Notes: generated by a model not told the origin, from the letters alone. Shown: positions 6,283 to 63,289, numbered from the stretch's first letter. The stretch: 64,000 nt of DNA from Mytilus californianus (GCF_021869535.1 NW_026262637.1:8494001-8558000); one strand, 5' to 3'. Made by a program: numbers and translations.

Positions 6283-6925
6283 TTTTCAGCTCACCGGGGC
6301 CCTTCGGGCCCCATGTGAGCCTATGCCATCAATTGGCGTCCGTGGTCTGTCGTCGTAAACTATTTCAAAAATCTTCTCCTCTGAAACTACTGGGCCAAAT
6401 ACCTTCAAACTTGAACCAAATGTTCCTTAGGGTATCTTGTTTATAAATTGTATCCCAAGTTTTGATCCATCTACAAACATGGCCGCCATGGCTAAAAATA
6501 GAACATAGGGGTCAAATGCAGTTTTTGGCTTGTATCTCAAAAACTAAAGCTTTTAGAGCAAATCTGACGTGGGGTAAAATTGTTCAATTGGTCAAGATCT
6601 TTCAGCTCTGAAATTTTCAGACGAATCGAACAACCCATTGTTGGGTTGCTGCCACCGATTTGGTAGTTTTAACAAAATTTTGCAGTTTTTTTGTTATTAT
6701 TTTGAATATTATTATAGATATATATAAACTGTAAGCAGCAATAATCTTCAGCAAAGTAAGATCTACAAAAAAGTTAAAATGACCATAATTGTCAATTGAC
6801 CCCTTAAGGAGTTATTGCCCTTTAAAGACAATTTTACACAATTTGTTCATCAAGTTTGCTAACATTTAAAAATCTTCTCCTCTGAAATACAGGTGAGCGA
6901 TTCAGGCTCTTGAGAGCCTCTTGTT
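6283..6925 (+). mobile_element. Helentron/HINE (pearl-like) non-autonomous element
   Basis: 5' TTTTCAGCTCACC with a palindrome, GTCGTCGT microsatellite, 3' inverted GGTGAGCG, then hairpin AGGCTCTTGAGAGCCT and TTGTT. Inserted in a T-rich site. Confidence 0.8.
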
Positions 6926-43456: not shown

Positions 43457-43860
43457 CCCACCCGGCACTCAACGTCATTTCAACGTTGATAAATGATTGA
43501 TGTTTGGTCATGACGTTGTTTCAACGTTGTTTCAACGTTGAAATAACAACGTTGAGTTTAGGTTGAAGAAAGTATGTTGTTTCAACGTTGAATTTCGGTT
43601 GTTTCTACAACGTTGAATTATGGTTGCAGAAAGTATGTTGTTTCAACGTTGGATTTTGGTTGTTTCTATAACGTTGAATTATGGTTGCAGAAAGTATGTT
43701 GTTTCAACGTTGGATTTGGTTGAATCTTCAACGTTGAATTTAGGTAACAGAAAGTATGTTATTTCAACGTTTAATATAGGTTGATTCTTCAACGTTGAAT
43801 TTAGGTTACAGAAAGTACATTGTTTGCTGAATTTTGGTTGAATCCTTAATGTTGAAGGTA
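43457..43860. repeat. Left subterminal array of palindromic CAACGTTG motifs, partly in ~41-bp tandem units
   Basis: More than 10 copies of (TT)CAACGTTG between 43470 and 43850. Confidence 0.9.
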
Positions 43861-44233
43861 TATATATATATGTTGAAAAATGCTGTTTAAAAGTTGATTC
43901 TTTTATGTTCAAATCAAGGCACTGGCTGTGGTTACACACAGAAACTAAAAAACAATAAGAAATAGCTAAATTGTTATAAGCGCTGGTGAAGTGGACCCCC
44001 TTTTTTATTTTTGTGTTTCTTTTATTTAATTGACAATATTTTTTTTCATATTTCAACCTATTTTTACTCAATTTAGCTTATAGTTAATAATTATAAGTGC
44101 ATGTTCAACAGTTTTTATATTAAATGCAATTCTACTTTATACATTTTCCCTCTTATTCAATAGGATACGACTCCCGATACGACTTAAAAAGTCTCAATAT
44201 ACTTTTTTTGGTTAATTACAAACAATTAATTTA

Positions 44234-44334
44234 CAGTGGCAGATCCAGATTTTTTTTAAAAGGGCACTGACTATAACCTATAATATATAGGGGTCCGCTC
44301 TAGTCATGCTTCAGTGATTCCATTTATAATTTAC

Positions 44335-44365
<31 letters not shown>

Positions 44366-44383
44366 ACCTTTGATCCGCCTATG
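44234..44383. mobile_element. Degenerate CAGTGGC(G/A)GATCCAG MITE copy
   Basis: Ends CAGTGGCAGATCCAG and GATCCGCCTATG with an internal poly-C. TSD not preserved. Confidence 0.6.
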
Positions 44384-44549
44384 AATACTAAGCGGTGATA
44401 AAACTGAATAGCAGAAATGGTGACTTTTTCAAGTTCAGGTTGTATATAAATGCCAAACGAATGACCAACTTTAACTAATTAAGTCCACAATATAATTATA
44501 TCGTCATATTGACAAAAATGATAGTCGGAAATTATCAAATAGAACGAAA

Positions 44550-44658
44550 GCACGCGTGCGCGGCTTTTGGCGGCATTTCTCTGCATACGCGCGTTGGTCA
44601 AGTCACTCCTAAATCCAAAACAGCACATCACCCAGAAGAAGATTGTATTAGAAGTTTT
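44550..44658 (+). promoter_or_regulatory. Putative promoter and first non-coding exon of the transposon transcript
   Basis: CpG-rich patch with palindrome GCACGCGTGC (44550-44559) and CGCGCG in a CpG-poor element, followed by a GTAAGT donor at 44659. Confidence 0.4.
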
Positions 44659-45449
44659 GTAAGTATATATTAACTTGTCTACAAATATATGGATACTTTA
44701 AATTTTGTTTTATCATACTTAAATTATATATTATTCTTTCAACATCAGTTAGATAAACTGTTTAGTCGCGACAGGAAATATATATTATTGCATGGTGGAC
44801 ATTTTGAGGTGAATCAACTGAACATTCAAAGAAATTATTAATTAGCCAACACAATTTGTCAGTTTAAATAAACGTAATTAAATCAATTCATATTTATTCA
44901 GATAAGATTGCTTCTGGGTATGGAAATTATGTTTTAATTTAAAAAAACGAGGTGAATTTTGACACGGAACAAAAAACCGGAAGTATGTTCGCATTTGTAA
45001 GGATTTTAGGTAAATTTATAAACAAAAATTTGACACGCTAAATATGATCAAATATAAAACGCTCGTATTTACGCTGTCTTTGAACTAATTAAGTCATTGA
45101 GTGTAGTAGTCGGTCGAGGACCAGCTTAATATATTCTAACCAGATGATGTAAAAAAATGAAAAAGTAAGATGAAGGACCTCGTTTTGAATCCTAAACTTT
45201 TTTTCAGAAATTAATGAATATAACTGTATAACATAAATCACCTGGAACTTGTACAGCTGTCATGACTACATGTAGTCATTATTGAAGAGTGACCATGACT
45301 TCTCTAGTTGAAAAATTAACATATATTCTTGCATTTGTAAACAAATGTAATTTATGCAGTAAATCACATTGTAGTCTGTTTTGTCCCTTTTATTACAGTG
45401 CGGCCGAGATAAAGCCATTAACAAAAATTCAGTGTTGAAGATTGAATGC

Positions 45450-45790
45450 ACCACCCGGGGGGCCTACTGACCATCTTTTTGGGTATAACTGTGCCGATAG
45501 CACTTGCCAAATGAGACCCTGTTCTAACCAGAAAATATTGAAAAACATACCCTGTTCTAGACACACTCAGAACATTTATACCCTGTTTAAGATATTTAGA
45601 CTGTTATTTTACATAAGCGATCCTGTTCTAGACTGTATGTTTAAAAAGTGTCCCTGTTCTAACAACAGGACATGAAAAAAGGACCCTGTTCTAAAAGCAT
45701 GGCATGAAAGAAAAAGGGACCCTGTTTTGCGGCACACCCATACCACGTAAAATATACATAAAGATATATAATACAGAGTTTTATTTCTAC
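45450..45790. repeat. Fragment of a CCCGGGGGG-ended MITE with seven spaced CCCTGTT(CTA) motifs
   Basis: Motif at ~45517, 45551, 45581, 45622, 45652, 45685 and 45720. Confidence 0.55.
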
Positions 45791-46804
45791 TGTACTCAAT
45801 ATCCTGTACATATAAAAATAAGAAGTGGTATATATCGATGCCAATGAGACAACGAATCCATCCATCATGTCCAAGACTCAATGCAGTGAAATAATGTACA
45901 TTGTAAGTGTATACACCATGTTATATGGAAACCTGGGTTGATTTTCCTTTTTGATTCTTACAAAATAGCAGTAGTGGTAATCTTAGTATTTTATTTTTAG
46001 TAGCGAGTGATGCTTTTGTATATCTTGGCCACTTCAAATAAAATTGAGTGAACAAATACTGTTTTAAAATTCATGTAAATAATATGAATTGAACAAAAGA
46101 AGATGGGGTATGAGTGCCAATTAGACTCTTAATCGAAGATTTATTGTACATGTATTTAATTCATGTTAATTGTATATATTTAGTCAGATTCATCATTATT
46201 GTATCCATGCACTTGTAATTGACAGAAGTAGTGAATACACTATTTACTTTTGTCTGTCTCATGATGATGGGTGGCAAGGTCCTCACAAGGTTGGTGTCTG
46301 TCTCAGATGGTCATTCTTAACCTTTTTAAGAAGGTAAAAATGTACTAATGGGTGTGGTTTCATTATTTTGGTATTTTGCTTTTAACAACAAGTGACACTT
46401 TTTCAAATCCTGGCGGTTTGAAATAATAAGTAACTACAAATAGGGGCTGGTGCACACTTAGTTACAGATGTCACCATCATGTGTACCTGTATATGCTTTG
46501 AAGTTATGCATTGTATACAAAATGTCTCCAGGAGCTACATGTAGCATGGTCAGATAGATGTCAAGAAAAGATATTTTGGTCTCCTAAGAGGGATATATAA
46601 TCGACAGTTTATAAATTTATGTAAATTTTTACCCAAAGGTTTGAATTTTATTTAAATTTTTTTACCAACTATATAGCTAACTGACATTGAAGTTAGCAAT
46701 AAATGATTAAAAAATGTATAACTATTTTCACTGTTTCATTACAGGTTTTATAGTCTGTTGGTTATTTGATTATAAGTAGTCTGGATATACCATTATAAAA
46801 TAGG

Positions 46805-46834
46805 ATGGCAGAAGGAAATGGAAGAGATCTACCT
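46805..46834 (+). CDS. Shared first coding segment MAEGNGRDLP (exon probably 46745-46834)
   Basis: TTTCATTACAG acceptor at 46744, first ATG at 46805, GTGAGT donor at 46835. Phase 0 is compatible with both 49213 and 51578. Confidence 0.6.
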
Positions 46835-47149
46835 GTGAGTTTATAAAATTACTTTTTTTAAGCATTAAATTATAAAACCGAAAAACATGGCTTCACTAAG
46901 CGTTGGATGTTGATATCTTATCAATAATAAAAGTCTGTAAATTAAATACATGTATTAAATTAAATCAATTATAAAAATATAGCACTCGCAGAGAGAAATT
47001 CATCTGTGATGGTTTCTCAATTTCAGAGATGAATCCATTTTGCAGAGGAGCCTACAGGGAGGAGATAACTGCTATTTGGCATGTTGCATGAGAATGCATG
47101 TCACATGTTTTTGTCACAATCATGTTTATTAAGGATTTTGAAATATTTG

Positions 47150-47773
47150 ACCCCATAGAATAAACAAACTAGGCTATATATATATGGAACTTTAATATAA
47201 TGTTCCTTAGAGTATCTATTTTATAAATTGTACAAGTTTTGATCAATTGACAAACATGACCGCATAGCTATAAATAGAACATGGGGGTTATTTTAAGGAA
47301 ATTTTGCAGTTTTTGATCACTATCTTGAATATTATTATAGATAAAGAGAAACTGTAAACAGTAAAACTGTTAAGCAAAATAAGATCTACTAATAAGTCAA
47401 TAATACCAAAATTGTCAATTGACCTTTTAAGGATTTATTGCCCTTAAAACTTAAAGATATTTTACTTAATTTCTTTTACTTGTTAGCTTACTTTAAAAAA
47501 TCTTCTCCTTTGAAACTGCTGAATAAATTTCAGCCAAACGAGTTTCAGAGTATTTAGTATAAATTTTATATTTATTTCCTTGTACGTCAAGAAACATAGC
47601 CTGTATTGGCTAAAATAGAACATAGGGGTAAAATGCATTGTTTTGCTTTTGAAGAAGATATGACCAGATTCAAGAATATATTTATATAAATTAAAAAGCC
47701 AAAATAATCATTGATGAAAGATTTAAACAAATAATTTAAGGTGAGCGATTCAGGCTCTTGAGAGCCTCTTGTT
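47150..47773 (+). mobile_element. 5'-decayed Helentron/HINE-like element in the first coding intron of the transposon
   Basis: Homologous to 6283-6925; identical 3' end GGTGAGCGATTCAGGCTCTTGAGAGCCTCTTGTT. Confidence 0.75.
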
Positions 47774-48592
47774 TATAGTTACTTGTACAATTCTTTCCAG
47801 AATTTTATGAAACTTATGTCATAGGTTTATATCAACAATTCACATGACTCTGACAACTTCAAAATTTGGTACCAATCACTTTTTTTAATAGAAAATTTTC
47901 AAGAATTTTATAAAACAAATTCTATATAAAATAATATCAGCAATATCTCTAACAATTCTAAAATGGTTGCCATTTGACTTTTTAAAAAAGAGTGATGCCA
48001 TCTGTATTTGTAACATTTGATAAATGAATTATTTGCAACGTGGGGAACATGGAAACTATGTTCTCTTATATATTTTACTTCAGAATCACTGTTTTCTATT
48101 CTTATGCATGTAAACCTAAATGCATGCATGCAGCAGAGCCTCATGGGCCATTTTTTATATCAAGTTTTTTGTTTGATTGCTGTATTTTTTGGAAACTTTT
48201 ATGATTGAAGCCAGAGTATAGAAAACCAAGAAAATCTCTGAGGAAACTATATAAAAAATAATATGTTATAAAGTCATCCTTTAATAACAACAATTGTCCA
48301 CATATTAGTCAAAATTAAAATGGTTACCCAAGTCTTTAAAATGTACCCAAAAGCCCCCCTTCATTTTATTGTAAATTTTAAATGCTGCTGGAAAATTATC
48401 ATTGTGTGGATCTATAAGAGACAAAATAAATGTGAGCATATCTTCAAAATGGTTTTATCAAGAATAATCTTAGAATTGTCAGTTATATATACTAATATCA
48501 ATCTGAAACTTGATAAAAAAGAATATTAATTTTAAAATTTCTGCCCAGCCTACATGTATACCCTATTTTGTTTTGCCTAATCTATGAAACAT

Positions 48593-48735
48593 CAGGGGCG
48601 GATGCAGGAATTTTCAAAAGGGTGGGTGCAAAATATATGTCCCGATACAAATGCATTGATCGGCCAAAATAAAGGGGGGGTGCGAACCCCCGGAACCCCC
48701 CCCCCCCCCCCCCCCCTCCTCTGGATCCGCCACTG
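48593..48735. mobile_element. CAG...CTG MITE with a 5-bp TSD (hAT5-like)
   Basis: Ends CAGGGGCGGATGCAG and CTGGATCCGCCACTG, with AACAT on both sides (48588-48592, 48736-48740). Confidence 0.8.
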
Positions 48736-49212
48736 AACATTATGTCACAAAGAAACAATAATTAAAATTAAATAGATAATTTTCAGACTTAATAAAGGCC
48801 AGACTTTTTTTATTATTTGTTAAGAGAGAAAATTTTGGGCGAAATAGAAATAAAAGTCAAAAGTTGTGCTCAGTTGGTTCCAAAAATGAAAATACAATTA
48901 ATTATGATTAGAAAAAAAAACCTGCAAAATAACTAACGGTTCTCATTCCAGATTATTTTTTTCTGGTTCTTAACATAGGGTAGGCAGGTAGGAGGGAAAG
49001 TAAATATAAACGTTGACAAAGTCTATTTTATTTTGGTTTTCCAAAACTTAGGGTAGGCTTATGTCGTTGAAAAACAATAAAAAGTCTAGCCTAATGGATT
49101 ATCATATTTATATTAAAATGCAAACGAAATGCATGATCAACTTTCAGGAATTTTAACACAACATATAACATGTATAAACATATGCATGTAACAAAATTCA
49201 AACCTTTTACAG

Positions 49213-51189
49213 CGCTCATATCTTAGAAGATGGAGAATGTATAACACTGAGGTAGAAAACTTGGCTTGCCTAAGTGATGATGAGGAAAGTGTGTCGAGCC
49301 ATGTATCAGCTGTACAAGAAGGTTCAGAAAGAATGCATGAATTGTCTGAAAGTCAGAGCAGTAACATTAATATTAATCATGAATATGGCAACAATGAAAA
49401 TGAAGCGAGTAGTGATAATGTCGAAAGCAGTAATGATGAAGAAATAAGTAGTGAAGAAGAACAGAGTAGTGAAAATGATAGTTCTGGAAGTAGCCGAGTA
49501 TCAAGTGAAGATGAACAATCTGATTCTGATAATAATGATCTTTGTAAAGATTTAGCTGAATGGGCCACTGAGAACAAAACATCAAGAGATGGCTTAAATT
49601 CTTTGTTATTTATCTTTAGAAAATATGGACACCGCGTTCCAAAGGATTCTAGAACACTGTTAAAAACTCCTCGACATATCGATATAAATAAAAAATGTGG
49701 AGGTGACTATATATATTTAGGAATTGAAAGTGGTATTTTAAAAATTTTGACTCAAAACGCAAGACATTTTACAAGAAATAATGAGCTGTTGTTAGATTTT
49801 AACATTGATGGTGTCCCACTTTTTAAATCATCAAACACACAGTTTTGGCCTATATTATGCAGTTTGTCAAAATATGAACCTTTTATAGTGGCTTTATACT
49901 GTGGAAATTCCAAGCCAAATTCTGTGCAGGCTTATTTGTCAGATTTTTTAGGAGAGTTGGAAAATTTAAAAACGCATGGAATAACTTTTAATGAAATTTT
50001 ATACACCGTCAAATTAAATGCTTTTATATGTGATGCTCCAGCCAGGTCCTTCATAAAATGTACTGTAGGTCACAATGGTTACTACAGCTGTGAAAGATGT
50101 ACCATTAGGGGTGAGTGGAATGGCCGTGTTGTTTTTAATTCATCTGATAACAGTCCTCCATTGCGAACTGAGGAGGAATTTAGAGCATGCCTATACAGCA
50201 ACCATCAAACATCACGCTCACCATTAATAGATGCAGGACTGTTTTGCATAAATACCTTCCCACTTGACTACATGCATTTAGTTTGTCTAGGTGTAGTGAA
50301 GAGGATTCTTATGTTCCTGAAGCAAGGTCCAAGGGAGTGCAAGTTGTCACAACAACAACTTAAATTGATATCAGACAAACTAAAAAACCTCCGTGGGAAA
50401 ATGCCAAGGGAGTTTGCTAGACAGCCACGTTCTCTTGAATTGGACAAATGGAAAGCAACAGAATTCAGACAGTTTGTCTTGTACAGTGGGCCCTTAGTGC
50501 TGAAGTCTGTTCTTTCTAGGGCTATGTACAACCATTTTTTAACATTGACCGTGGCCTTAAGCATTCTTTTAGACTCAATTAAAGAAACCAGAAATGCCTA
50601 CTTGGATTATGCCCAAGAACTTATGACATATTTTGTGAAGAATGCCACAACTCTATATGGAAATACATTTGTTTCCTATAATGTTCATGCATTGGTCCAT
50701 GTTACTGATGATGTAAAAAACTATGATACATCACTCAACGATTTGAGTGCATTTCAGTTTGAAAATTATTTACACCAGATTAAAAAGAAGGTTAAAAATG
50801 GACAAAACCCTATTGTGCAAGTAGTCAAGCGATTGACAGAGGCAGAAAAGTCTAATATTCGTCGTATTCATAGTAAGACCTTTATGTATGTATCCATGAA
50901 AAAAAAGGATGGTTGTTTTCTTCTCTGGAATCAGAATTTCGCCTTTGTCAGAGAACGACGCCCAGGAAAAAAATATGTTTGTGATATATTAAAGCCACAA
51001 TATACTGAACAATTTTTCAAGGAGCCATGTGATTCCAAATTGATTAACATTGCTGTTGCTAAAAACATAGAAAGATATGCTTCAAGGCAAATGGTGGAAG
51101 AAGCTGACATTGAAAGAAAAGTTGTTTGCTTGCCATATGAAGGAGGGTACCTGTTGATGCCTATGTTGCATGGTATTGAGAGACATTAG
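49213..51189 (+). CDS. CACTA/EnSpm-type DDE transposase exon (658 codons; 668 aa with the 10-aa leader exon)
   Basis: Open 650-aa ORF extended to the TTTTACAG acceptor (RSYLRRWR...). Motifs NIDGVPLFKSS.QFWPIL, CDAPARSFIK..GHNGYYSCERC, LDYMHLVCLGV, WKATEFRQF, NVHALVH and FQFENYL. Confidence 0.95.
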   Translation, partial: RSYLRRWRMYNTEVENLACLSDDEESVSSHVSAVQEGSERMHELSESQSSNININHEYGNNENEASSDNVESSNDEEISSEEEQSSENDSSGSSRVSSEDEQSDSDNNDLCKDLAEWATENKTSRDGLNSLLFIFRKYGHRVPKDSRTLLKTPRHIDINKKCGGDYIYLGIESGILKILTQNARHFTRNNELLLDFNIDGVPLFKSSNTQFWPILCSLSKYEPFIVALYCGNSKPNSVQAYLSDFLGELENLKTHGITFNEILYTVKLNAFICDAPARSFIKCTVGHNGYYSCERCTIRGEWNGRVVFNSSDNSPPLRTEEEFRACLYSNHQTSRSPLIDAGLFCINTFPLDYMHLVCLGVVKRILMFLKQGPRECKLSQQQLKLISDKLKNLRGKMPREFARQPRSLELDKWKATEFRQFVLYSGPLVLKSVLSRAMYNHFLTLTVALSILLDSIKETRNAYLDYAQELMTYFVKNATTLYGNTFVSYNVHALVHVTDDVKNYDTSLNDLSAFQFENYLHQIKKKVKNGQNPIVQVVKRLTEAEKSNIRRIHSKTFMYVSMKKKDGCFLLWNQNFAFVRERRPGKKYVCDILKPQYTEQFFKEPCDSKLINIAVAKNIERYASRQMVEEADIERKVVCLPYEGGYLLMPMLHGIERH

Positions 51190-54100
51190 GTAAAGATTCA
51201 ATAACATATACACATTCATATTTTAAGCTAATGTGTAATGGTGTAAATAGATTTACAAGTTAATACTACAAAATGCATGTTAGAGGTTTATTGAATGTAA
51301 AACATAGAATGTTTTAATACTAGAATGGGCCTAAATTCCTTTTGTGAAATATTAAACATTTTTTAATGCATTTAAGGTACATTAGAGAGTTGGAAAAACA
51401 CCCTCTTTAAAAGAACAAAATATAATAAAATTCATGTTATAAAATGTGATAATTTTAATTTTGTGCATCCTCAAGCATGATAAATTAGTGCATGAAGCAT
51501 CATGGTACATTTTCACGCATGTTGTAGCATTAGGTTACAATATTATTGTTAATTCATATATTACAACTTTTTCATAGGAAAATAGTGAAGCAACATGGGC
51601 GTTGGCTGTTTGGAAGGAGCAGGGTGAAGAGGAGGAGGGAACTTTACCACTCTCTTGGATTGGAGAGAAACACATCATGTGGCCACCTGGCACCAATGTA
51701 AAAAGGTAAATGAAAGAGATGAAAAAACCAAGTGACAACTGGATGAAGTTTGAGTTGGTAAAAATCAAGTTTAAATCTAGTAAGTATAAATTTATTTTAT
51801 TTATATCATGCATATATATATACCAAATTTGCAAATAAACACAATTCTGAAAGCTCTTGTCCTTTTTTAATCTGTTTAACATTTTACAATGCTGATTAAG
51901 GTGTTGATTGAGTGGCTTCTGTAGACCTTAAACTTTCAAAAACTGTTATACATGTACTTTTATTTTAGTAGTCAATTATAAATCTGAAAGTACCAACACT
52001 ACATTTTAATCAGAATGTTTGAAAGGACCATTAAAAAAAGAATTTCCTTTTTTCTGTTCGTCTACTTCAATTTAAACCATATTAGAATAAAGAATGTAAA
52101 CAGGGAATATGTCAAAAAGACAACAACTCTACCAAAATAAAACAACCCAAGACCACCAATTTGAAAACCTGTACCCAGAGTTGGGCTTGAGCAGGCCTGG
52201 AAACACTAATGTATACCAGACCATGAGGATTGATCCACTCGAAGCAAAATAGAAAAAAATACACAACTAACAAACTATTTATATATGCCAAAAAAATTGT
52301 TTTAAAAGATGGGTGCACTTTTTACTAGTTATTGTAATTATTTTGATCTAAACATTTGGTTATTTCTGGAAAATTTTATGTATTAAAAAATGTTGAACTT
52401 TATATTTTGATATATTTACAGACAAAAGAAAAGAATGTGAAGATTATGACTTTACCACTACAGCTGAATTATCTCCTGATGAAGCTGATAGTGATCATGG
52501 GAAAAAAAGGATACTTAAGAAAAAAGTGTTCCAAGACTTTATTACAGGTATAAATTTCTACCAATAGATGTCGCCATAAATCAAATAATATCTTTTGAAC
52601 AATAAAAACAATTCCAGTATTTATATTGATACTTATTAACTAATAGAGAAAAAAATAATGTTTTTCTTCTGAGCAAAATTATGTGTCTCATTCTAAGAAG
52701 TCCATCAATTATTTATTCATTGATAAGATATTATTTCAACTTATGATGTTATAAATTAGTTTTAATTTCCAGTTGTCTGCCATTTGCTGAGAATGTGTTT
52801 GTCAGTCCAATTTATTTTGTGTACTTTAAGTATCAGACATATTAAAAGTGCTGGAGCTGTAAATCAATATATGGATGCTGCTATATATATAACAATAAGG
52901 ATCAATATGATCATTCTTTCTCAAAGAGGATATAAATGCAATACTGGATCAATTTTTGAACCAGATTAAAGGCTATTTCCTGTATTGCAGATCACACAAA
53001 AAATGTTTTGCTGACCTTTGGACTCCATTTATTTCAGCCGATGTCCCTAAACATTTTGCCAGGTTTTTTTTTTTACCTATAAATAATTTTACCATATTTT
53101 CTATATATTTCAGAAATTGGTAATGAAGAAGGCACAAAAGCTACTGATAAATCAGGTACAAAAAATACTCTCTCGCTATTCATTTGTTTTTACCTAATTT
53201 ATTATTTTATGTCAACAAATAGCTGCTTAAAATCAATGTTATAAATAATATTCAGACAAGTTTTTTGCTCTATCTAACAAGTAGTTGTGAGAAAAGTTAA
53301 TGTTGAACCCTGTTTTTTTTCTGTTTAATTTAAAATGTACCACATTGTAAAACTGCTTTTATTGTAGTTGGAGCATCTAAAAATGGAAAAAATAAGGATA
53401 AGGGTGAAAGTCAAGCTACTGTTCCAAGAAACCAAGGTAAGGAAAACAAAATCAGCTTAAAATTTGTGCATGATTATATATTTGTTAAAGTTAAAGACTT
53501 TAAATGTTATAAGTACATATATACATATACATGTATGCTTGAGTAATGTTATAGTTTGAAGAAAAATGCTTTTTAAATTAAAATCTAGACTTTCATGACA
53601 TGCAAACTTACGAGACTTGAGCCATTGAAAAATCAAGGTTATCTTAATCAGTTCAAGGGTTTCTGTTTTACTAATTTTAACTAGCAGTATAATTGTGGTT
53701 TTGTCATATCATTGTCTAAAGCATTTGATTTGAAGTTTGATGACTGTCTATCGTAGTTATGTGTGTAACTTTAGTGTATGGTTTCATTTCTTAAATTGTG
53801 TCATAGAGTTATACATTTGTAATTATGATACATGCATGTACAAGATCCTTTAATGTCAATTCAACAAAGAATAACACACCATACAAGATGTTATTTTAAG
53901 CATAATTTAAGTTATTCACTTAATTTCAGAAAAATCTTCATCAATGCCGAAGCCTCCCACAAAGTTAATTGAAAGAAACGCACAGTGCAAAGAATTGGGT
54001 GAGTTTGATAAATAGCTTTAATTAAAATATACATTGAACTAAATTTTTTTGTTAACTCCTGTGAAATATTGGTTGCCACCAGAGATAAAAAAGGTGTATT

Positions 54101-54331
54101 ATTAAATGAATAGATTATTCAAAATGATGCCTAGAGGATTGTGTTTTCTTTTTTGTGGAAGTATGCTGTCTAATGAGTCCATTGCTTTCAAATTATCTTT
54201 ATGAAAACTAGATCTGGGTATCAATAAATATGAAGTTGTTAAATTTTCAATCAAATTTACTTCTGTTTACCAAAAATAAATTGGTGGCCCTTTAGTAGAA
54301 TAAGCCTGTTGAATAAACCATTTTAAGGGTA

Positions 54332-54508
54332 CAGTGAAACCTGACTAAACCGAACCTCTTTGGGACTTGATATGTTGTTCGGTTTTGGCAGGTATTCGGT
54401 TTAATCAGGTTCATAATGCATAAAATGTGATATGATTGGTCTTCAGAACAAGTTTGTTTTAGACAGGTTTTCGGTTTAGTCAGGGTTCGGTTTAGTCAGG
54501 TTTCACTG
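54332..54508. mobile_element. Tc1/mariner (pogo/Tigger-like) MITE
   Basis: 25-bp perfect TIR CAGTGAAACCTGACTAAACCGAACC, flanked by TA on both sides. Confidence 0.9.
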
Positions 54509-54913
54509 TACATGTTTGTATCCATACGGGGCCACCTTTAAAAAACTACTGTTTGGTGTTGCCTTATATTATCACAGTCTGTGCCAAAAACTTTTTCATC
54601 TACTTGTACGAAATCTAAATATCAAAATTTGTCCCTATATGCCTATATTAAATTTTTGAAATTGGTACTAGTCCAAATCAATATTTACTAGTATGGTTCA
54701 TAGGACTAGTGGCAACCTCGGAGCAGGAAATAATCTGAAAATGTTTTTTGTGAAGGCTGCTTTTTAGGAGAAAAAGGCATGTTTCGATGAATTGTAATAG
54801 AAAATGTTATTTATGACGTAAACTGTTCCTGTTGTCTTTTTTATGTGCTTTTGTTATATGATTGCTTTAAATGGAAAAAGAAATAATTGTTTGCCTTCTT
54901 TTTAACTCCATAG

Positions 54914-55726
54914 TTACAGAGAAGAAGAGTTCCAGTCAGACTTCTAACCACAGAGATTCTAGATCGCCATCACAAAAATTGAGTTCCAGTCAGACTTCTA
55001 ACCACAGAGAGTCTAGATCGCCATCAAAAAAATTGAAGTCTACAAATACATTGAAGTCCACAACAAGACCATCTACCAGGCAAGAATCACCACCATTTCG
55101 TCAGAAGTCAAGATCTCGATCACCACTTATCACACAGAGGTCCAGATCAAGATCAAGATCCCCACCATTATCTCAGAGGTCAAGATCTAGATCTCCACCA
55201 AACAATCAGACATGGAGATCTAGATCAAGAAGCTATTCACCGCCGACAGATATTTTTTCAAAACTAAAATCTATTTATTCCTATTCGTCCAAGTCCACAA
55301 CAAGATCACCAACAACACAGAATCCATCACAAAGAAAACCGTCAAACACAACTCAAAAATCCACAAGACCTTCAATAGAGGAGATATTACAAGAATTGAA
55401 AAAAAGATCCTCACATAGTCTCCATACTCAGAAATCAAAATCTAGTGAAGATAGGTCACATTCAACAGGGAACAGTCAAGGGTCTAGATCTTCCTCACCT
55501 CTTGAGGATTATCTACTGCCAAGCTCACAATCTCAACCACAGAGAGTTTCTACCAACAACAACAGAGCAAGGTCTAGATCACCACTAGAGGATTGGCAGT
55601 CATTCAGCAGCAACATAAGCTCAAGGTCTCATGTCAGGGAAAATACTTCAACACCAGCTGCAAAAAATATACCATCTGGCAGAAAGACGAGTAACAATTC
55701 AGAGACATTTCCAATGTCTGATGAAC
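54914..55726 (+). CDS. Large Ser/Arg-rich low-complexity exon of the accessory gene
   Basis: 813 nt, phase 1-1; RSRSRSP runs; a 54-bp tandem duplication at 54928 and 54982. Confidence 0.85.
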
Positions 55727-55957
55727 GTAAGTGTAAATTTACATCTGCATTTCAAAATGATATCACACAAAATTTTGAATCAAACACTAGGAAATACCTT
55801 CAACATGCCTTACTATTTTGATATTTACCTGCACCACACAACTACTACTTCAATTGTTGGTTAACCCTAGATGTTTCAGTTTTATTTTGATATTTATTAA
55901 GGAAAGGTTTTGAAAATACTAATTTTTTTCTTATGAGAGCTTTCTGCATAGAAATTG

Positions 55958-56240
55958 TTTTTATGCCCCACCTACGATAGTAGAGGGGCATTATGTTTTC
56001 TAGTCTGTGCGTCCGTTTGTCTGTTCATCTGTCTGTCCTGTGTCAGGTTAAAGTTTTTGGTCAAGGTAGTTTTTGATGAAGTTGAAGTCCAATCAACTTG
56101 AAACTTTGTACACATGTTCCCTATGATATATTTTTAATTCAAATGCCAAATAAGGGTTTTGACCCCAATTTCACGGTCCACTGAACATAGAAAATGATAG
56201 TGCGAGTGGGGCATCCTTGTACTATGGACACATTCTTGTT
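55958..56240 (+). mobile_element. Short Helentron/HINE-like element
   Basis: 5' TTTTTATGCCCC...GGGGCAT palindrome, GTCCGT/GTCT microsatellite, 3' GGGGCATCC...ATTCTTGTT. Confidence 0.75.
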
Positions 56241-56357
56241 TACATATAATACATGTCACATTTACACCCTTACTATATATATGTATTGAATATACTGGGT
56301 ATTTAAGACAAGGCATTGTAATGTTGCATTAATCATACATTGGTTTTATCATTTTAG

Positions 56358-59011
56358 GTTTCCAGAGAAGAGTATTGTTTTTACTAACAGAAATAAGAGA
56401 CCTGCTGAAAAAAGATCAGTGTGCCACAACTGCACAGACACACTGTGAACTTGAAAGGGCGGAAACCTTAGACGAATTTTTTGAATTGGAAAATGCCTTG
56501 GATGATGTAGCTCAGCAGACAAGATTGGTTAGTTTTATATTACAGTTTATGTTTTTTAATAAATATAATGTTTTGTTCTGACATATAATATTTAAAAATA
56601 ATTATCAGAATACATGCTTGATAATGATTCTTTTGAAACTAGACATTTTTACTATGATTCTCCTTTAAATTATTTTATTTGTTTTTATTAGTTTCAGATG
56701 AAAATTATGCTTTGCACAGGAAAGTGATACATATTAACAATGATAATTTTTCGGAAAAATAAGCACATAAAGAATTTTAATTTCTCACAGACACATTTGT
56801 TGTTTTGAAGGGTCATTGTTAATTTCAGTCAATGCATACAAGTATACAAAAACCATTTTTGTTTATAGACAGAATATTTGAGAAGAATTGGAGGTGCTGG
56901 AAGCAGTGACCTAATGAAGAAAGCCATGACAAGGTAAGTTGAAAGAGACTACAATTTATTTACAAAAGTCTGTCGAAAAGATTAAATAATTCTGTTAATG
57001 CCAGTTGAAAAAGTAATTCATTGTGTTTAAGGGGCACTAGCTTTGGAGTTTATAAAAATTAAATTATTTTTTTGGCAAACATTTATGTGGAATTTTAAAA
57101 TAATATTTCGCTATTAGCAGTCAGTTTGGTTTACATTTTGTCATAATGAGCTAATAAATTCTCTAAATGTATTACTCAATTGAAACTGAATAATTCACTT
57201 GTTTAAATTCATATTACTTTGAACTTCAATTTGCCCCTTAACTGGCATTTGTTATGTATGAGCTTAGCAAGTTTAGTTAATATTGAAAAGAAAGAAATAT
57301 CAACCTTTCAATAGAATTGTCAATTGCACTTCCTTAATTGTCTTTTATTTTGACATATTTTGTAACCAGGTTGAAGAAAAAATGTTATACTGGGTATTTT
57401 ATTTTAATGTAGTTAGATATTGAAACTGCATATTCACTTTTAATATGTATGCAAATTTTGTTTTTTTTTATACCCTGAAAAAACAAAATTTAGGGGATAT
57501 ATATGATAAATGTTTCTTGTCAGAATTTCAAGGGAGATAACTGATTTTACTTAGTTAATATTGCAATAAATGGCAACAAGTCTTGTAAGCACAACTACTA
57601 ACAAATTAATCAATATTGATGAAACTTTACACAGTTGTTGTACACAACCCGAAGATGTGCATGATGGAGGATATTTCTGATCTGATTTTTTTCAAGGGAG
57701 AAATTGCAATTACTTAATTTAAATATCACAATATGTGGCATAACGGGATGGGGGTATCCTTAGTGAGTTAACTCATAGTTTTATGCAATACTCTTATAAT
57801 GCATAATACTATCCACACTCATCTGTGTCCACTTGTTTTTATTAGCAGTAGAAACCTGTATTCAAATATTTAAACTTCAATCCTAAGAAAATGAACTAGG
57901 TTGAAATTAAGTGGTCATATTGTATCAGATTTATATTTTGTGTTCCAGAATGATGTCAAACATTGTCATGGCAAGAATGAACCTAAAAGGGAAAAAGAAT
58001 AAGATAGCTTTCCTAAAAACAAAGCTTTACAAAGTGATCTCAGGTAAGCTTTGATAAATCAATAAACATGACAACATTATTAATTTATAGACATTTTGAT
58101 TTGCTGAACTTTTGAAAAAAAACTTTAAAAAAACCATGCATTCAATGGATTGAAACTAGACTTTGAACAGGTGCCAATTCAAAATTAAAAATTGCCACCA
58201 TGGAAGGTAAAAGGTTTGTAAAGATGATCTATTATCTAGCATTTATATATATATTTTATATTATCTTTTTGATATAATTTGATTATTTTATATATAAATT
58301 AAAGAGAAAATAAAAAAAATATTCACTTTATTCAAGCAATTAGTTTATGTTGTTGAACAGGATTTTTTTAGCATTGATATCAATCAAAAATGAAATTAGT
58401 TGCAAGCTTACTTACAAACTCCAAGGAATATTATTTGAATTGTAATTTGGGCTTCTTATTTTTGATAAATAAGTGTAAATAAGTATGTGATGATAGAAGG
58501 GTTAGCAATTTCAGGCTCTTAGGGACTTGATGGGTGCTTTGAATGTGACCTGTATAGAAACAAATTGAAATTTCAACAAAATGTTTTCAGCCTGGTGGCA
58601 TATTTCTATCTAGAAATTGTTATAAATTTATTGCAAGGAATATAAATTATAAACAATGATATTTTTCATTTCTTTTACTCAATGTATGTTTTTTTTTACC
58701 AACTAATTCTAAACTTCACTAGAAGCCTTACAGTAAGCTTTATTTGCATCAACCCTCCATTTTCAGCAAAGTACTTGTTGTGTTATTTATATTTTATTGA
58801 GTGTGCAAAGTTTTGGCAAATGACACTGTTCACAATAATTGATTTGAAGTATACATATTTTAAGACTTACCATGATGTATATGTGTTTACAGGATGCGTA
58901 ATGATGGTGTATCCTGAGATCACAGAAACTAAAGTAAAGGAAGATATTGGGAAGTTTTTAAAATATGCCCCCGAGAGAGCTGGAGGAGGGGGAAGGACCA
59001 GCAAAGATTAA
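56358..59011 (+). CDS. Four terminal exons encoding the coiled segment and DUF4806-like C-terminal domain
   Basis: FQRRVLFLLTEIRD...EYLRRIGGAGSSDLMKKAMTRMMSNIVMARMNLKGKKNKIAFLKTKLYKVISG...IGKFLKYAPERAGG fits the DUF4806 pattern (L..IGG, G...K..F....L, L..A..R.GG). Confidence 0.85.
57461..57782 (+). mobile_element. Degenerate Helentron/HINE-like element
   Basis: 5' TTTTTATACCC...GGGGATATA; 3' GGGGGTATCC followed by hairpin-like TGAGTTAACTCA. Confidence 0.55.
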
Positions 59012-59879
59012 TCCAAATTACAAAAATAAATTCAATTTTAAACAAATTTATTGCATTCATTTCACTTACTTCAATCAAGAAAGGTGTCCAAAATTAGAGC
59101 AGACATCAGTGAAATTCTGAAAGAACTTATTTTATCAGTTCACTATTTCTGTGTGTAACTACAGTTACAGAAAAATACTCAAAACTTGATTTACCGACGA
59201 TAAATTACTGTTTGCTGCTTAAAATAAATAACCTCAATTCAGACCGACTTATAGGCGGGTCAAGCCTGAATCCTCAGATTTTCAAACTGAAAAGGGCATC
59301 CGACTTATAGGCAGATTGACTTATAAGCGAGTATCTACAGTAGTTTCTTTGCTAGCTGAACCGTGAAGTCATTACTAGCTCGGATTAATACCTCCTTTGG
59401 GCGGAGTCTAGTCAGTCAGAGAACCAATAAAAAAGTGTAAACATAAACATTGTACTACAGTTTTACCTATTTAGAATCCACATGCAAGACTCATTCCATA
59501 TTTGGAAGGTGTACATGAGCTAATAATGACCTTGTGGTTCATGTAGCATGGAAGCTAATCAAACAGTTTGGTTTTACCTACACTTTAAGTCCGATGGCTG
59601 TAATAGGTATTTTTTTATTTCTCATTTTATATATAGATGAGACTCTTGGTTTTCCTGTTTGCATTGTTTAACACTGATATTTTTGCCTTGATAGCTTTCT
59701 GTTGTGTGAGCCAAGACGTCTTTCCCTGTTGAAGGCAATTATTAACCTATAATTGCTTACTTTAACAAAGTTGTGACTTGGATGGAAAGTTAGTCTCATT
59801 AGCATTCATACCACATCTAATTTATACTGTTCACCTTAATCAACTGTTTTCCTTTTCATCGATTATTCAATTTCAGTCA

Positions 59880-60170
59880 GTCTACCAAAAATCATCCTTG
59901 TTGAAACCTTGAAATAATTGTTATTTACATATTGTCAACCAAAAATCAACCTTATTTCAACGTTGAAATATGATGTTGTTTCAACGTCAACCTTTCAACC
60001 TATTCTCAACCAAAAATCAACATTGTTTCAACGTCGAAATATGACGTTGTTTCAACGTCACCTTTTCAACGTCATCTCAACTTTCAAAATCAACAGTTAA
60101 ATCAACGTCATTTCAACGTTGAAAGTCGACGTTATTTCAACGTTGAAACAACGTTGAAATGCCTGGTGGG
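59880..60170. repeat. Right subterminal array of CAACGT(T/C) motifs
   Basis: About 10 copies of TTTCAACGT(T/C) ending at the terminal GCCTGGTGGG. Confidence 0.9.
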
Positions 60171-61070: not shown

Positions 61071-63289
61071 TTTATATGAAACAAAGCAGGACCAACTCTT
61101 TCATATTGGCATTATACGGATTTGTTCAACAAGGAAAGTTTACCTTTCGTCGATATGTGTTCAACGATACCATACACATGTATTTCGTTCTCTGCACACT
61201 AGTTACATGTTTTTCCAGATTGGTTTAAAATACCAGAATTGAAGTCTGGTCTGTTCATTATCCGATGCTGTAACATTTTGACTGGCAAAATCATTATATG
61301 GCGAGTGATGCACGCATAGCAGGATTGTGCGTTTAAAGACATGTATATACCCTGTCTACTTCTTGGTGCCTTTCGAAATCAGGGACTTGTTTTTCTGTGG
61401 TTAATGTTGGTTTGTATATGTCATTTTTAAAATGTATTGTTATGTCATGAATCCGGCTGTTAGTTTTAATATTGGGTTAATAATACATTGTGTCATGTTG
61501 GGACTTTTACTTTGAAGACTGACTGTACGGTATGAATTTCCCTAACGGCTGAAGGCCAAACAGTCACCCAAAGTTGCTTCAAGCACGAAAAATGGGCTCT
61601 AGTGCATACACTACAAACTGCTGAGAGTCTGAAAATAAACATTTTGTGCTCGACCAGTAAAGTCGAGGTAATCTCGACAGAACTTAACTGTTCTAAACAA
61701 TCAGGTTGAACCCACCATTTCTTAAAATGTCCTGTACTAAGTCTTATTCACCACTGCTCCGTATACAATGACTTTAGAGAAAGTACTTTTAATAATATCT
61801 TTTCTAGCATGAATTACTAAATATGACCGACGATGAAAAGATTTTCTTTTCGATGATAAACTTTCCTAGAAAGCTGTCTAAGTATACAGTGAAAGCGTTC
61901 TGACATCGACGTGTAGTTATATACATATGAAAAACTTAATAACAGTGTGTTCTAATTTCCATTTTGATCATGTAGTTGACAGTGACAAGTGTATTTGTTT
62001 GTAATATTAAAATGTAAAAAGGTTACTTCATAGTCAATAGGAATAATTTCCGTTTCTTTATTATAAATATTAATTCATTATATATTCAACAGGACATTGA
62101 AGAAGTCTTTGAATTATTTCATTTTCATTTAATTTTCAATTCTTCAATTTGAATTAATTATTTTGAATTTAGCTAAATCTTTTTCATTATTTTGTTTGAA
62201 ATTCGTGATAACAGAAATGCGATTATCGATTTTGAAAGTGACTTTTAGACCCAATGGGTCGGGTGTGTTTTATTATTTATTGAATATATTTGTATTAAGT
62301 TAAACTGTTATTACACATGTCAATATAATGAAAATGTACTTACTTACTCGCAATAAAAACAAACGCCAACACACATAACATTGTCATAAAGCGGGAGGTT
62401 TGTCATGTCATTAAACCCGGTTCAACCCACCATTTTGTTTTCTCAAAATGCCCTGTACTAAGTCAGGAATATGGCAGTTGTTACCAAATAGTTCGTTTCT
62501 ATTTATGTATCATTTGCGTTTGTTTTTGTTGCACTTATGTGTTTCTGTTGTACTGTAAAAAGTAAAATCACAAAAATACTGAATTCCGAGGAAAATTCAA
62601 AACGGAAAGTCCCTAATCAAATGGCAAAATCAAAAGCTCAAACACATCAAACGAATGGAAAACAACTGTCATATTCCTAACTTGGTAAAGGTATTTTCTT
62701 ATGTAGAAAATGGTGGATTAAAACCTGGTTTTATAGCTAGCTAAACCTCTCACTTGTATGACAGACGCATAAAATTTCATTATATTGACGACGATGTCTG
62801 AACAAAACAAACAGACACAATAGGTAAAAATGTCAATAATAGGGGTGCAGCAGTCAACATTGTGCTATCATCTTAATCACTCTAGAAACAACCAAATATA
62901 GTAACAAACTTAACCATGGCGAAATACAACATGTAGCACAATGACGGGATGTATAAGTACAGAGCCACGTTATATGTAACAAAGAATTACAATAAAGCAT
63001 ATAGACAAAGCATATTAGCAAAAAGGAAAGACAAGAATACAAAAATAATCATAGAACAATAACATAATAACGGGATGTATAAGTACAGAGCCACGTCAAA
63101 TGGATACCACCAAAAGCAGACTAAACACTCTAAGTAATATTCATAAAAGAATACTACAACACGTTATTAAGATGATAAACAACAGCAGTACCAAGAATCT
63201 ATACTTCTAGACCATCGTGTATTATTTGTGAAGTTGATACCGAATATTTATCAACAAGGTCTTGGTACCTTCCGATGAACTTTTTAAGA

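What the first reader, a model, noticed from the sequence alone, without database searches (positions are those of the whole stretch)
46745..59011. One CACTA transcript, two proteins: the whole transposase behaves as a skippable cassette exon
Seen in the sequence: a phase-0 leader exon (MAEGNGRDLP, donor 46835) can splice in frame either to 49213 (transposase) or to 51578 (accessory gene). The transposase exon has its own acceptor and a GTAAAG donor at 51190, directly after its TAG. All ten downstream exons then join in frame to 1800 nt. Established: maize En/Spm makes TnpA and TnpD by alternative splicing of one transcript. Inference: this animal element does the analogous thing with an inclusion/skipping switch, and the DUF4806-type protein acts as the TnpA-like binder of the subterminal repeats. 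I know of no description of this switch for animal elements, but I could not search.
Basis: partly seen in the sequence, partly recalled or inferred. Interest (0 to 1): 0.85.

Follow-up and report, generated by a model that had tools for sequence, protein, structure and literature searches.

The report
Mussel transposon with skippable transposase exon
A young 16.7-kb cut-and-paste transposon in the California mussel carries its whole transposase gene as one exon that splicing can probably include or skip, so one transcript could give either the transposase or a DNA-binding helper protein, much as maize En/Spm does; in this copy the helper gene is broken.

Summary
The window is Mytilus californianus. 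The finding lies in a 16,714-bp CMC ("animal CACTA"/TRC) DNA transposon at 43457-60170. It has CCCAC...GTGGG ends, a 2-bp target duplication and arrays of the palindrome TTCAACGTTGAA near both ends.

RNA-like contigs show the 51189|51578 and 51779|52422 joints directly, and imply 46834|49213. RefSeq models leader+transposase (668 aa) at this locus.

A sister copy has TTA there, so this copy cannot make the full accessory protein.

The skipping joint (leader to 51578) was not seen in the thin RNA data. RefSeq does model it at three sister copies that are about 99% identical. Neither coding exon has a usable ATG of its own, which makes the shared leader ATG the simplest reading.

Relatives in M. 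edulis, a clam, a loach and a starfish keep a single-exon transposase tightly bounded by splice sites.

The accessory protein matches DUF4806 at Pfam's threshold and is predicted to have a BEN DNA-binding fold (Z 10.2).

Alternative splicing of an animal CACTA-superfamily element was published in 2006 (SmTRC1). I rate this a new variant of a known kind, of moderate interest. The scan noted the same layout on another piece of this genome.

The parts
43457..60170 (+). Whole transposon (16,714 bp), flanked by a 2-bp target duplication TT
   Evidence: Sister copies L001 and L010 share sequence only between these ends. TSDs are TT here and AT in both L001 and L010.
43457..43467 (+). Left terminal inverted repeat, CCCACCCGGCA
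60160..60170 (+). Right terminal inverted repeat, TGCCTGGTGGG (reverse complement CCCACCAGGCA)
43479..43799 (.). Left subterminal array: 9 copies of the palindromic 12-mer TTCAACGTTGAA, each with at most 1 mismatch
   Evidence: 13 of the 14 window hits lie in the two arrays, against 0.39 expected by chance. Also.
59956..60147 (.). Right subterminal array: 4 copies of the same 12-mer
44540..44659 (+). Possible promoter and untranslated first exon: a GC-rich patch ending at a GTAAGT donor at 44660. Inferred only.
   Evidence: Read from the sequence. There is no RNA evidence.
46745..46834 (+). Leader exon. AG acceptor before 46745, ATG at 46805, ten codons (MAEGNGRDLP), phase 0, donor GTGAGT at 46835.
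   Evidence: RefSeq proteins P0274, P0002, P0122, P0271 and P0273 all begin with this peptide. The 27-letter overhang of an X1 contig is consistent with it.
49213..51189 (+). Transposase cassette exon: 658 codons plus TAG at 51187-51189. It is intact, with all family-invariant residues present. Donor GTAAAG at 51190.
   Evidence: RNA contigs start at 49213 and join 51189|51578. XP_052088210.1 sits at this locus.
51190..51577 (+). Intron between the transposase exon and accessory exon 1. It ends with an in-frame TAG at 51575-51577. RNA depth here is zero.
51578..51779 (+). Accessory exon 1 (conserved N-terminal barrel domain). It has no ATG before the conserved residues. An in-frame TAA lies at 51707-51709 in this copy.
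   Evidence: L001 has TTA at that codon. The 51779|52422 joint is seen in RNA.
52422..52547 (+). Accessory exon 2
53114..53155 (+). Accessory exon 3
   Evidence: The same joints appear in RefSeq protein P0122.
53368..53436 (+). Accessory exon 4
53930..53998 (+). Accessory exon 5
54914..55726 (+). Accessory exon 6, the Arg/Ser-rich disordered middle of the protein. Alternative boundaries 54920 and 55732 also keep the frame.
   Evidence: pLDDT is below 50 here.
56358..56527 (+). Accessory exon 7: a long helix and the start of the DUF4806/BEN-fold domain
56869..56933 (+). Accessory exon 8 (BEN-fold domain)
57949..58043 (+). Accessory exon 9 (BEN-fold domain)
58893..59011 (+). Accessory exon 10. 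Stop TAA at 59009-59011; AATAAA at 59025-59030.

Best explanation
What it is: a 16.7-kb member of the CMC (CACTA/En-Spm, Mirage, Chapaev) superfamily of cut-and-paste DNA transposons. It belongs to the animal 'TRC' type, with CCC termini and a 2-bp target duplication. It sits in Mytilus californianus and was active recently: at least four copies are about 99% identical.

How it most likely works: the element is one transcription unit.
- A short leader exon carries the only usable start codon (ATG at 46805) and ends in phase 0.
- Its donor can pair with either of two acceptors.
- Pairing with 49213 includes the 1977-nt transposase exon. The product is a 668-aa leader+transposase protein whose stop codon is the last codon of that exon. 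The accessory exons then follow as untranslated sequence, as in maize tnpD mRNA.
- Pairing with 51578 skips the transposase exon. The product is leader+accessory protein.

The accessory protein has a small N-terminal beta-barrel, an Arg/Ser-rich disordered middle and a C-terminal BEN-fold (DUF4806) domain. I infer that it binds the palindromic subterminal TTCAACGTTGAA repeats and helps assemble the ends for the transposase, as TnpA does in En/Spm.

This copy has an intact transposase, but a TAA at codon 54 of the accessory frame. It would need the accessory protein supplied by another copy.

Basis of each step:
- Shown: the element's ends, the exon structure, the inclusion joints, and the DUF4806 match and BEN fold.
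- Modelled by RefSeq but not seen in reads: the skipping joint.
- Inferred: DNA binding to the repeats, and any regulation of the splice choice.
For: Element:
- Ends, TSDs and repeat arrays.
- Sister copies at 99.2%, about 99% and 99.0% identity.

Transposase:
- 2256 homologues were found.
- Invariant D199, D274, C293xxC296, H492xxxH496 and E517 fit the CMC signature quoted in PMC12730594.
- Relative P0098 hits DUF4218 (27.4 bits) and Transposase_21 (22.3 bits) in the order seen in plant CACTA transposases.

Inclusion joints:
- RNA-like contigs cover exons only. They show 51189|51578 and 51779|52422, and a 27-nt overhang at 49213.
- XP_052088210.1 (leader+transposase, 668 aa) lies at this exact locus.

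Skipping:
- Three RefSeq proteins begin MAEGNGRDLP and continue straight into ENSEATW.
- One of them (L010) has the whole transposase exon, with an AG acceptor, inside the skipped intron.
- LOC127701430 has two isoforms with different 5' ends.

Need for the leader ATG:
- The frame is closed by TAA 22 nt upstream of 49213, and by TAG directly before 51578.
- The first internal ATGs (49237, 51677) would drop residues that are invariant or nearly so: W7 and R8 in alignment A2, and A20, W22, E24, E30, P34 and W37 in alignment A4.

Relatives:
- M. edulis, Ruditapes, Misgurnus and Patiria have a single-exon transposase with an acceptor 0-30 nt before its ATG and a candidate GT donor, read from the sequence, 0-31 nt after its stop. 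Only the M. edulis donor is backed by a gene model.
- Their accessory exon 1 has an acceptor 1-10 nt before its ATG.

Accessory protein:
- PF16064 scores 25.0 bits against a cut-off of 25 for this locus's own model, P0276.
- The AlphaFold2 C-terminal domain has pLDDT about 90.
- The top 15 structural matches are all BEN domains. The best is BEND6 at Z 10.2, rmsd 1.8 A over 82 residues. The next unrelated fold scores Z 3.8.
- DUF4806 is called a BEN subtype in the literature.
Against: - No read or contig shows 46834|51578. The only RNA joint into accessory exon 1 comes from the transposase exon.
- Accessory exons are not covered more deeply than the transposase exon. A dominant short transcript, as tnpA is in maize, is therefore not evident.
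- No transcript-derived protein with the skipping joint exists in the protein collection.
- I could not see the evidence behind the RefSeq models. They could rest on ab initio or protein-guided prediction.
- The L008 copy with a skipping model has lost the transposase acceptor (AA instead of AG), which would force skipping there.
- All four copies compared carry at least one broken frame.
- DNA binding by the accessory protein is untested.
Confidence: 0.6

Rival explanations
1. Constitutive inclusion. The element makes only the long mRNA (leader, transposase exon, accessory exons). The accessory protein is then made from the second cistron, either by reading through the transposase stop codon to give a transposase-accessory fusion, or by re-initiation. 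On this reading the RefSeq skipping models are prediction artefacts.
For: - The only RNA joints seen are of the inclusion type.
- The M. edulis RefSeq accessory model also uses the joint from the transposase exon's donor to accessory exon 1.
- In the inclusion mRNA the accessory frame is the same as the transposase frame, with a single stop between them, in 4 of 5 elements. The chance of at least 4 of 5 is about 0.045.
- A fish RefSeq model (P0126) begins with a peptide resembling the transposase C-terminal tail, read straight into exon A1.
Against: - The leader ATG is also in frame with exon A1.
- Three RefSeq loci model the skip, and one gene has two 5' isoforms.
- The stop codon and its context are not conserved (TAG G, TGA A, TAG T, TGA C).
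- The donors in Ruditapes, Misgurnus and Patiria were inferred from sequence only.
- A stop codon followed by ten exon junctions would normally expose the mRNA to nonsense-mediated decay.
Confidence: 0.2
2. Two separate genes. The accessory gene has its own promoter and start in or near 51190-51577 and only happens to lie downstream of the transposase gene.
For: RefSeq annotates the accessory gene at this locus as a separate gene (P0276, 542 aa, starting at a Met after the TAA).
Against: - Exon A1 begins at a strong acceptor that is used in RNA, where it is joined to 51189.
- The intron has zero RNA depth.
- An in-frame TAG sits directly before 51578, and no ATG precedes the conserved residues.
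- Relatives also have an acceptor 1-10 nt before the accessory ATG.
- The separate RefSeq model here is explained by the TAA.
Confidence: 0.05
3. Decayed relic. The copies are dead, the transcripts are noise, and the splice layout has no present function in this genome.
For: - Every one of the four copies compared has at least one broken frame. Here it is the accessory TAA. L001, L008 and L010 have frameshifts, a deletion or stops in both genes.
- Expression is very low: 2-4x word depth in three small runs, and no reads on the transposase exon in about 6% of a 25.6-Gb RNA run.
Against: - Copies of 16.7 kb are about 99% identical, with intact TIRs and clean 2-bp TSDs.
- The transposase here is full length, with every family-invariant residue.
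- All splice sites are kept in all copies except one acceptor in L008.
- The defects differ between copies, so copies could complement each other.
- The architecture is conserved across phyla.
Confidence: 0.15

Closest known systems
Maize En/Spm (CACTA): tnpA and tnpD mRNAs from one transcription unit
   Same: - One transcription unit fills most of the element.
- The transposase coding sequence lies in what is the first large intron of the accessory mRNA.
- The long mRNA carries two ORFs in tandem, transposase first (as summarised in PMC1636069).
- There are subterminal repeat arrays, short TIRs and a short TSD.
- The transposase has the CMC motif pattern.
   Different: - Here the transposase is a single intron-less cassette exon, whose stop is its last codon.
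- The leader exon is coding and gives both proteins the same ATG and first ten residues.
- The TSD is 2 bp rather than 3, and the ends are CCCAC rather than CACTA.
- The accessory protein is a BEN-fold/DUF4806 protein with an Arg/Ser-rich middle. I saw no sign of kinship to TnpA, but I did not compare it directly.
- A dominant short transcript is not seen.
SmTRC1 of Schistosoma mansoni and the animal 'TRC' family of the CACTA superfamily (DeMarco et al. 2006, PMC1636069)
   Same: - It is an animal element with CCC at the TIR tips and a 2-bp TSD.
- It has a long transposase ORF with Transposase_21 similarity.
- It gives several alternatively spliced transcripts, including short ones without the transposase domain and one with two ORFs in tandem.
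   Different: - SmTRC1's splice forms are many and its downstream products were reported as not detectably conserved.
- Here the layout is a clean two-way choice with a shared coding leader.
- Here the accessory protein is conserved across molluscs, fish, echinoderms and cnidarians.
- Sequence relatedness to SmTRC1 was not tested.
BEN-domain DNA-binding proteins (Insensitive, BEND6, BANP, NACC1), with DUF4806 as a BEN subtype
   Same: The predicted fold of the accessory C-terminal domain matches BEN domains: Z 10.2 to BEND6 and Z 8.5 to Insv. Solved BEN domains are bound to specific DNA in these entries.
   Different: - Pfam's BEN model did not appear among the matches at E <= 0.1.
- This protein is encoded by a transposon, not a host chromatin factor.
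- Its DNA target is unknown.
Drosophila P element and PIF/Harbinger
   Same: - P element: splicing decides which element protein is made.
- PIF/Harbinger: the element needs a transposase plus a separate DNA-binding protein (mentioned in PMC12730594).
   Different: - P uses retention of one intron, not skipping of the whole transposase.
- Harbinger has two separate genes.
- Both belong to unrelated transposase superfamilies.
- These comparisons rest on my general knowledge.

Membership tests
CMC (CACTA/En-Spm, Mirage, Chapaev) transposase superfamily | [quoted passage not shown] | tested here: met
   Invariant in 16 diverse homologues and present in the window protein: D199, D274, C293-x-x-C296, H492-x-x-x-H496, E517. 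The catalytic roles are assigned by pattern, not by structure.
CMC (CACTA/En-Spm, Mirage, Chapaev) transposase superfamily | Pfam Transposase_21 (PF02992) and DUF4218 (PF13960) matches | tested here: inconclusive
   The window protein has no hit. Relative P0098 scores 27.4 bits for DUF4218 (cut-off 27) and 22.3 bits for Transposase_21 (cut-off 28.6), in the expected order. Three other relatives have weak DUF4218 hits.
CMC (CACTA/En-Spm, Mirage, Chapaev) transposase superfamily | Short TIRs with CA..TG or CCC tips, a 2-5 bp TSD, and subterminal repeat arrays | tested here: met
   Ends are CCCAC...GTGGG. There is a 2-bp TSD in four insertions: TT, AT, AT, and AA in M. edulis. The 12-mer arrays lie within about 350 bp of each end.
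Animal TRC family (SmTRC1-like) | CCC at the TIR tips and a 2-bp TSD | tested here: met
   compared with PMC1636069.
Animal TRC family (SmTRC1-like) | Sequence similarity of the transposase to the SmTRC1 ORF | not tested
En/Spm-type one-transcript, two-protein expression | The transposase coding sequence is spliced in (long mRNA, two ORFs in tandem) | tested here: met
   RNA contig joints 51189|51578 and 51779|52422, and an overhang at 49213. RefSeq XP_052088210.1 is at this locus.
En/Spm-type one-transcript, two-protein expression | The transposase coding sequence is spliced out from the same leader (short mRNA for the accessory protein) | tested here: inconclusive
   Not seen in RNA at 2-4x depth or in transcript-derived proteins. 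RefSeq models it at three sister copies.
En/Spm-type one-transcript, two-protein expression | The accessory protein binds the subterminal repeats | not testable with these tools
   Only the BEN fold and the palindromic repeats argue for it.
DUF4806 (PF16064) | Pfam match at the gathering score | tested here: met
   P0276, this locus's accessory model, scores 25.0 bits against a cut-off of 25, E 2.5e-5. P0273 scores 24.8. Fish relatives score 27-33 bits. The window's match sits exactly at the threshold.
BEN domain | The BEN fold | tested here: met
   AlphaFold2 model, pLDDT about 90 over residues 228-372. VIA-align gives Z 10.2, rmsd 1.8 A over 82 of 91 residues of the BEND6 BEN domain. The top 15 rows are all BEN domains, then Z drops to 3.8.
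BEN domain | Sequence match to Pfam's BEN model | tested here: not met
   No BEN family appears among Pfam matches at E <= 0.1.

The most novel reading that the evidence does not exclude
The cassette-exon layout may be an ancient regulated switch shared by this transposon lineage across molluscs, fish and echinoderms. The transposon's own accessory protein carries an SR-protein-like Arg/Ser-rich region next to a BEN DNA-binding domain, and it could feed back on the choice between including and skipping the transposase exon. The conserved in-frame placement of the two ORFs, with a single stop between them in 4 of 5 elements, could additionally allow a read-through transposase-BEN fusion. That would give three products from one transcript.
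Probability: 0.12. Interest if true: 0.8.

Novelty: new variant of a known kind. Interest (0 to 1): 0.5.

Why it matters
If the two-way splice choice is real, it shows that the En/Spm way of making a transposase and a DNA-binding helper from one transcript is not only a plant feature. It would be built into a widespread animal lineage of CMC transposons, in a very compact form: one cassette exon and one shared start codon.

It also gives DUF4806, a domain of unknown function that is expanded in many invertebrate and fish genomes, a concrete origin as a BEN-fold transposon accessory protein with a candidate palindromic target.

The family looks recently active in a mussel. The copies are 16.7 kb and about 99% identical, and one has an intact transposase. 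That makes it a possible experimental system and a source of structural variation in bivalve genomes.

It also explains several misleading RefSeq names for these genes, such as SRRM2-like, unc-89-like and PRP4 homolog.

Tried and rejected
Searches that gave nothing:
- Pfam on the window transposase gave no family. Pfam on single accessory exons also gave nothing.
- An exact look-up of the 650-aa ATG-started ORF found nothing on record. The same was true for P0001 and P0139.
- A search for transcript-derived proteins with the skipping joint returned only RefSeq models.
- The raw-read RNA run X11 gave no reads on the transposase exon, and only about 0.2x depth in one accessory-exon bin. It could not decide the question.
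- A structure search with the N-terminal barrel alone gave no match above Z 3.1.
- Paper searches for DUF4806 or the BEN domain as a CMC transposon accessory protein found no description.

Readings considered and rejected:
- My first reading, that exon A1 ends at 51705, is wrong. RNA reads run through to 51712 and the real donor is at 51780.
- A 3-bp TSD with CAC termini does not fit any copy, while a 2-bp TSD fits all.
- A promoter or ATG for the accessory gene inside 51190-51577 is excluded by the in-frame TAG before 51578 and by the RNA joint.

Limits reached:
- Read laying and the look-up of sequencing runs allow one call each, so the accessory exons beyond 52600 and the region upstream of 46650 were never laid with reads.

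Full report
**Where we are.** Locus L009 was fetched with RefSeq protein XP_052088210.1. It is 100% identical to window 36805-61189. The window is therefore Mytilus californianus, assembly GCA_021869535.1, contig JAKFGE010000015.1.

**The element.** The finding lies inside a transposon that I delimit as 43457-60170.
- Three sister copies in the same genome (L001, L008, L010) match the window only between these points, at 99.2%, about 99% and 99.0% identity. Their flanks are unrelated.
- The ends are CCCACCCGGCA and its near-perfect inverse.
- Each complete insertion is flanked by a 2-bp duplication: TT here, AT in L001 and AT in L010.
- Within about 350 bp of each end lie arrays of the palindromic 12-mer TTCAACGTTGAA. 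Thirteen of the 14 window matches fall there, against 0.39 expected by chance.

**Checking the observation.**
- The leader ATG is at 46805. Ten codons end in phase 0 at 46834, followed by GTGAGT.
- There is an acceptor before 49213.
- The exon 49213-51189 is 1977 nt, and its last codon is TAG. GTAAAG follows directly.
- There is an acceptor before 51578.

A search over all nearby GT/AG pairs gives a chain of leader plus ten exons. It totals 1800 nt in one frame and ends at the TAA at 59009-59011.

Exon A1 (51578-51779) contains an in-frame TAA at 51707-51709. Copy L001 has TTA (Leu) at that codon, and relatives have ordinary residues in that column. In this copy the accessory frame is therefore cut at codon 54. 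RefSeq's accessory model for this locus accordingly starts at a Met after the stop (P0276, 542 aa).

**RNA.** I laid one raw RNA run and three small runs that behave as RNA on 46650-52600. Those three cover exons and known repeats, have zero depth in the introns, and show GT..AG joints.
- One contig joins 51189|51578 and continues to 51712.
- One contig joins 51779|52422.
- One contig starts 27 letters before 49213. Those 27 letters account exactly for the only depth in the leader bin (2.3 x 27/199 = 0.31).

The inclusion form is thus shown. The skipping joint 46834|51578 was not seen. At 2-4x depth this is no refutation. It does mean that the accessory exons are not visibly more abundant than the transposase exon.

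**Annotation and sister copies.** The public protein collection holds RefSeq models that use the same leader in both ways.
- Leader plus transposase: XP_052088210.1 at this locus (668 aa) and XP_052085169.1 on copy L001.
- Leader plus ENSEATW..., which is the skip: XP_052063929.1 (L008), XP_052061267.1 (LOC127701430 isoform X1) and XP_052065921.1 (L010, 382 aa, running to the normal C-terminus).

L010 keeps the whole transposase exon, with an AG acceptor, inside the skipped intron. L008 has AA instead of AG at that acceptor.

I could not see what evidence NCBI used. To my knowledge Gnomon predicts alternative isoforms only from transcript alignments, so the two 5' isoforms of LOC127701430 are suggestive. 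No transcript-derived protein with the skip exists in the collection.

All four copies carry at least one broken frame. The window copy is the only one of the four with an intact transposase.

**Why the leader ATG matters.**
- Upstream of 49213 the frame is closed by TAA 22 nt away. The first internal ATG (49237) would remove W7 and R8, which are nearly invariant and invariant among 16 homologues.
- Directly before 51578 stands an in-frame TAG. The first internal ATG (51677) would remove six nearly invariant residues of the N-terminal domain.

In this subfamily both proteins therefore depend on an upstream exon for their start, and the leader is in frame with both.

**Relatives.** The transposase has more than 2,000 homologues, at about 50% identity, in bivalves, crustaceans, echinoderms and fish. 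I examined loci from M. edulis, Ruditapes philippinarum, Misgurnus anguillicaudatus and Patiria miniata.
- In each, the transposase is a single exon with an AG acceptor 0-30 nt before its ATG and a GT donor 0-31 nt after its stop.
- In each, a multi-exon gene follows on the same strand. Its first coding exon has an acceptor 1-10 nt before its own ATG.
- The M. edulis RefSeq accessory model uses the joint from the transposase exon's donor to A1.
- The M. edulis element also has CCC ends, a 2-bp TSD (AA) and the same CAACGTTG core in its subterminal repeats.

The ordinary state of the family is therefore like En/Spm, with a presumably non-coding leader and two exons that each carry their own ATG. 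The M. californianus subfamily has lost both ATGs and uses a coding leader instead.

**The proteins.**
- *Transposase.* Invariant D, D, CxxC, HxxxH and E fit the CMC signature. A relative reaches Pfam's cut-off for DUF4218 and comes close for Transposase_21.
- *Accessory protein, C-terminus.* PF16064 (DUF4806) is matched exactly at the cut-off for this locus's model. AlphaFold2 gives a confident helical C-terminal domain. Its top 15 structural matches are all BEN domains: BEND6 at Z 10.2, rmsd 1.8 A over 82 residues. The next fold scores Z 3.8. Two papers already call DUF4806 BEN-like or a BEN subtype.
- *Accessory protein, N-terminus.* The N-terminal domain of about 65 residues is a confident small barrel with no clear match in the PDB.
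- *Accessory protein, middle.* The middle is Arg/Ser-rich and disordered, which explains RefSeq names such as SRRM2-like.

**Mechanism and rivals.** My best reading (confidence 0.6) is a two-way choice of acceptor from one leader. It gives either transposase or a BEN-fold helper that I infer binds the palindromic subterminal repeats.

The main rival (0.2) is constitutive inclusion, with the helper made by read-through or re-initiation. It draws on the fact that only inclusion joints were seen. It also draws on the fact that the two ORFs are in the same frame, with a single stop between them, in 4 of 5 elements (chance about 0.045; three of the donors were inferred by me).

A separate promoter for the helper is nearly excluded (0.05). 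A purely dead relic (0.15) fits the broken frames, but not the youth of the copies or the conservation of the layout.

**Known or new.** Maize En/Spm does the same in principle. DeMarco et al. 2006 described CCC ends, 2-bp TSDs and several alternatively spliced transcripts for SmTRC1 of Schistosoma, including one with two ORFs in tandem, and made the tnpA/tnpD comparison explicitly.

In the library I could search, three things seem undescribed:
- the clean single-cassette-exon form with a shared coding leader;
- its conservation across phyla;
- the identity of the helper as a BEN-fold/DUF4806 protein.

I rate it a new variant of a known kind, interest 0.5. An unchecked first-stage note on another piece of this genome (s1-345131) records the same nesting.

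Noticed in passing
window 49213-51189 joined to 51578; L003, L004, L006, L007: In the inclusion mRNA the accessory ORF is in the same frame as the transposase ORF, with a single stop codon between them. This holds in 4 of 5 elements (window, M. edulis, Ruditapes, Misgurnus) but not in Patiria. It could mean read-through fusion, a relic of an older fusion, or chance (p about 0.045).
   Followed up: partly
P0273 residues 14-88 (window 51578-51779): The accessory N-terminal domain (RAVW.E...EEG.IP..W...WPP...W..F.L.K.K) is conserved, with 600 profile hits at E <= 0.001. It folds as a confident small beta-barrel, but its best PDB match is only Z 3.1, so its function is unknown.
   Followed up: partly
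P0129 and P0223 (fish proteins): In some fish RefSeq models, unrelated N-terminal host-like exons (a coiled-coil; a zinc-finger-gene N-terminal domain) are spliced onto the accessory exon-1 acceptor. The strong acceptor seems to act like a gene trap.
   Followed up: no
P0121 (684 aa): This retroelement-like protein ends in three tandem copies of the accessory N-terminal domain.
   Followed up: no
window 47247-47843 and 52023-52221: Two stretches inside introns of the element have RNA word depth in the hundreds to thousands, many variant letters and chimeric joints. They are probably copies of abundant, highly expressed repeats that inserted into the element.
   Followed up: no
window 48590-48735 and 44225-44400: Short elements with GGC.GATCCAGA-type ends around a long poly-C run look like MITE insertions. 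The poly-C length differs between sister copies.
   Followed up: no
window 54329-54511: A perfect 28-nt inverted repeat with a 127-nt spacer lies in the intron before exon A6. It is probably a small foldback element.
   Followed up: no
window 40170-40559 and 62558-63045: Inverted repeat arms several hundred bases long (78-96% complementary) lie 22 kb apart and bracket the whole transposon. They could be two copies of another repeat or a larger composite structure.
   Followed up: no
L003 (M. edulis, OY782966.1): The M. edulis relative (13 kb, ends at 6320 and 19336) lies within the span of a large host gene with ankyrin, COR and CARD domains, on the same strand.
   Followed up: no
XP_022311055.1 (P0139, Crassostrea virginica): This oyster accessory protein starts MSQEGNER...WALAVWKE. 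The leader-like peptide resembles MAEGNGR, so the coding leader may be shared with oysters. Its genomic structure could not be fetched.
   Followed up: partly
window 51424-51429: An AATAAA lies inside the intron after the transposase exon. A transposase-only mRNA ending there would escape nonsense-mediated decay. There was no RNA depth there in the runs laid.
   Followed up: no
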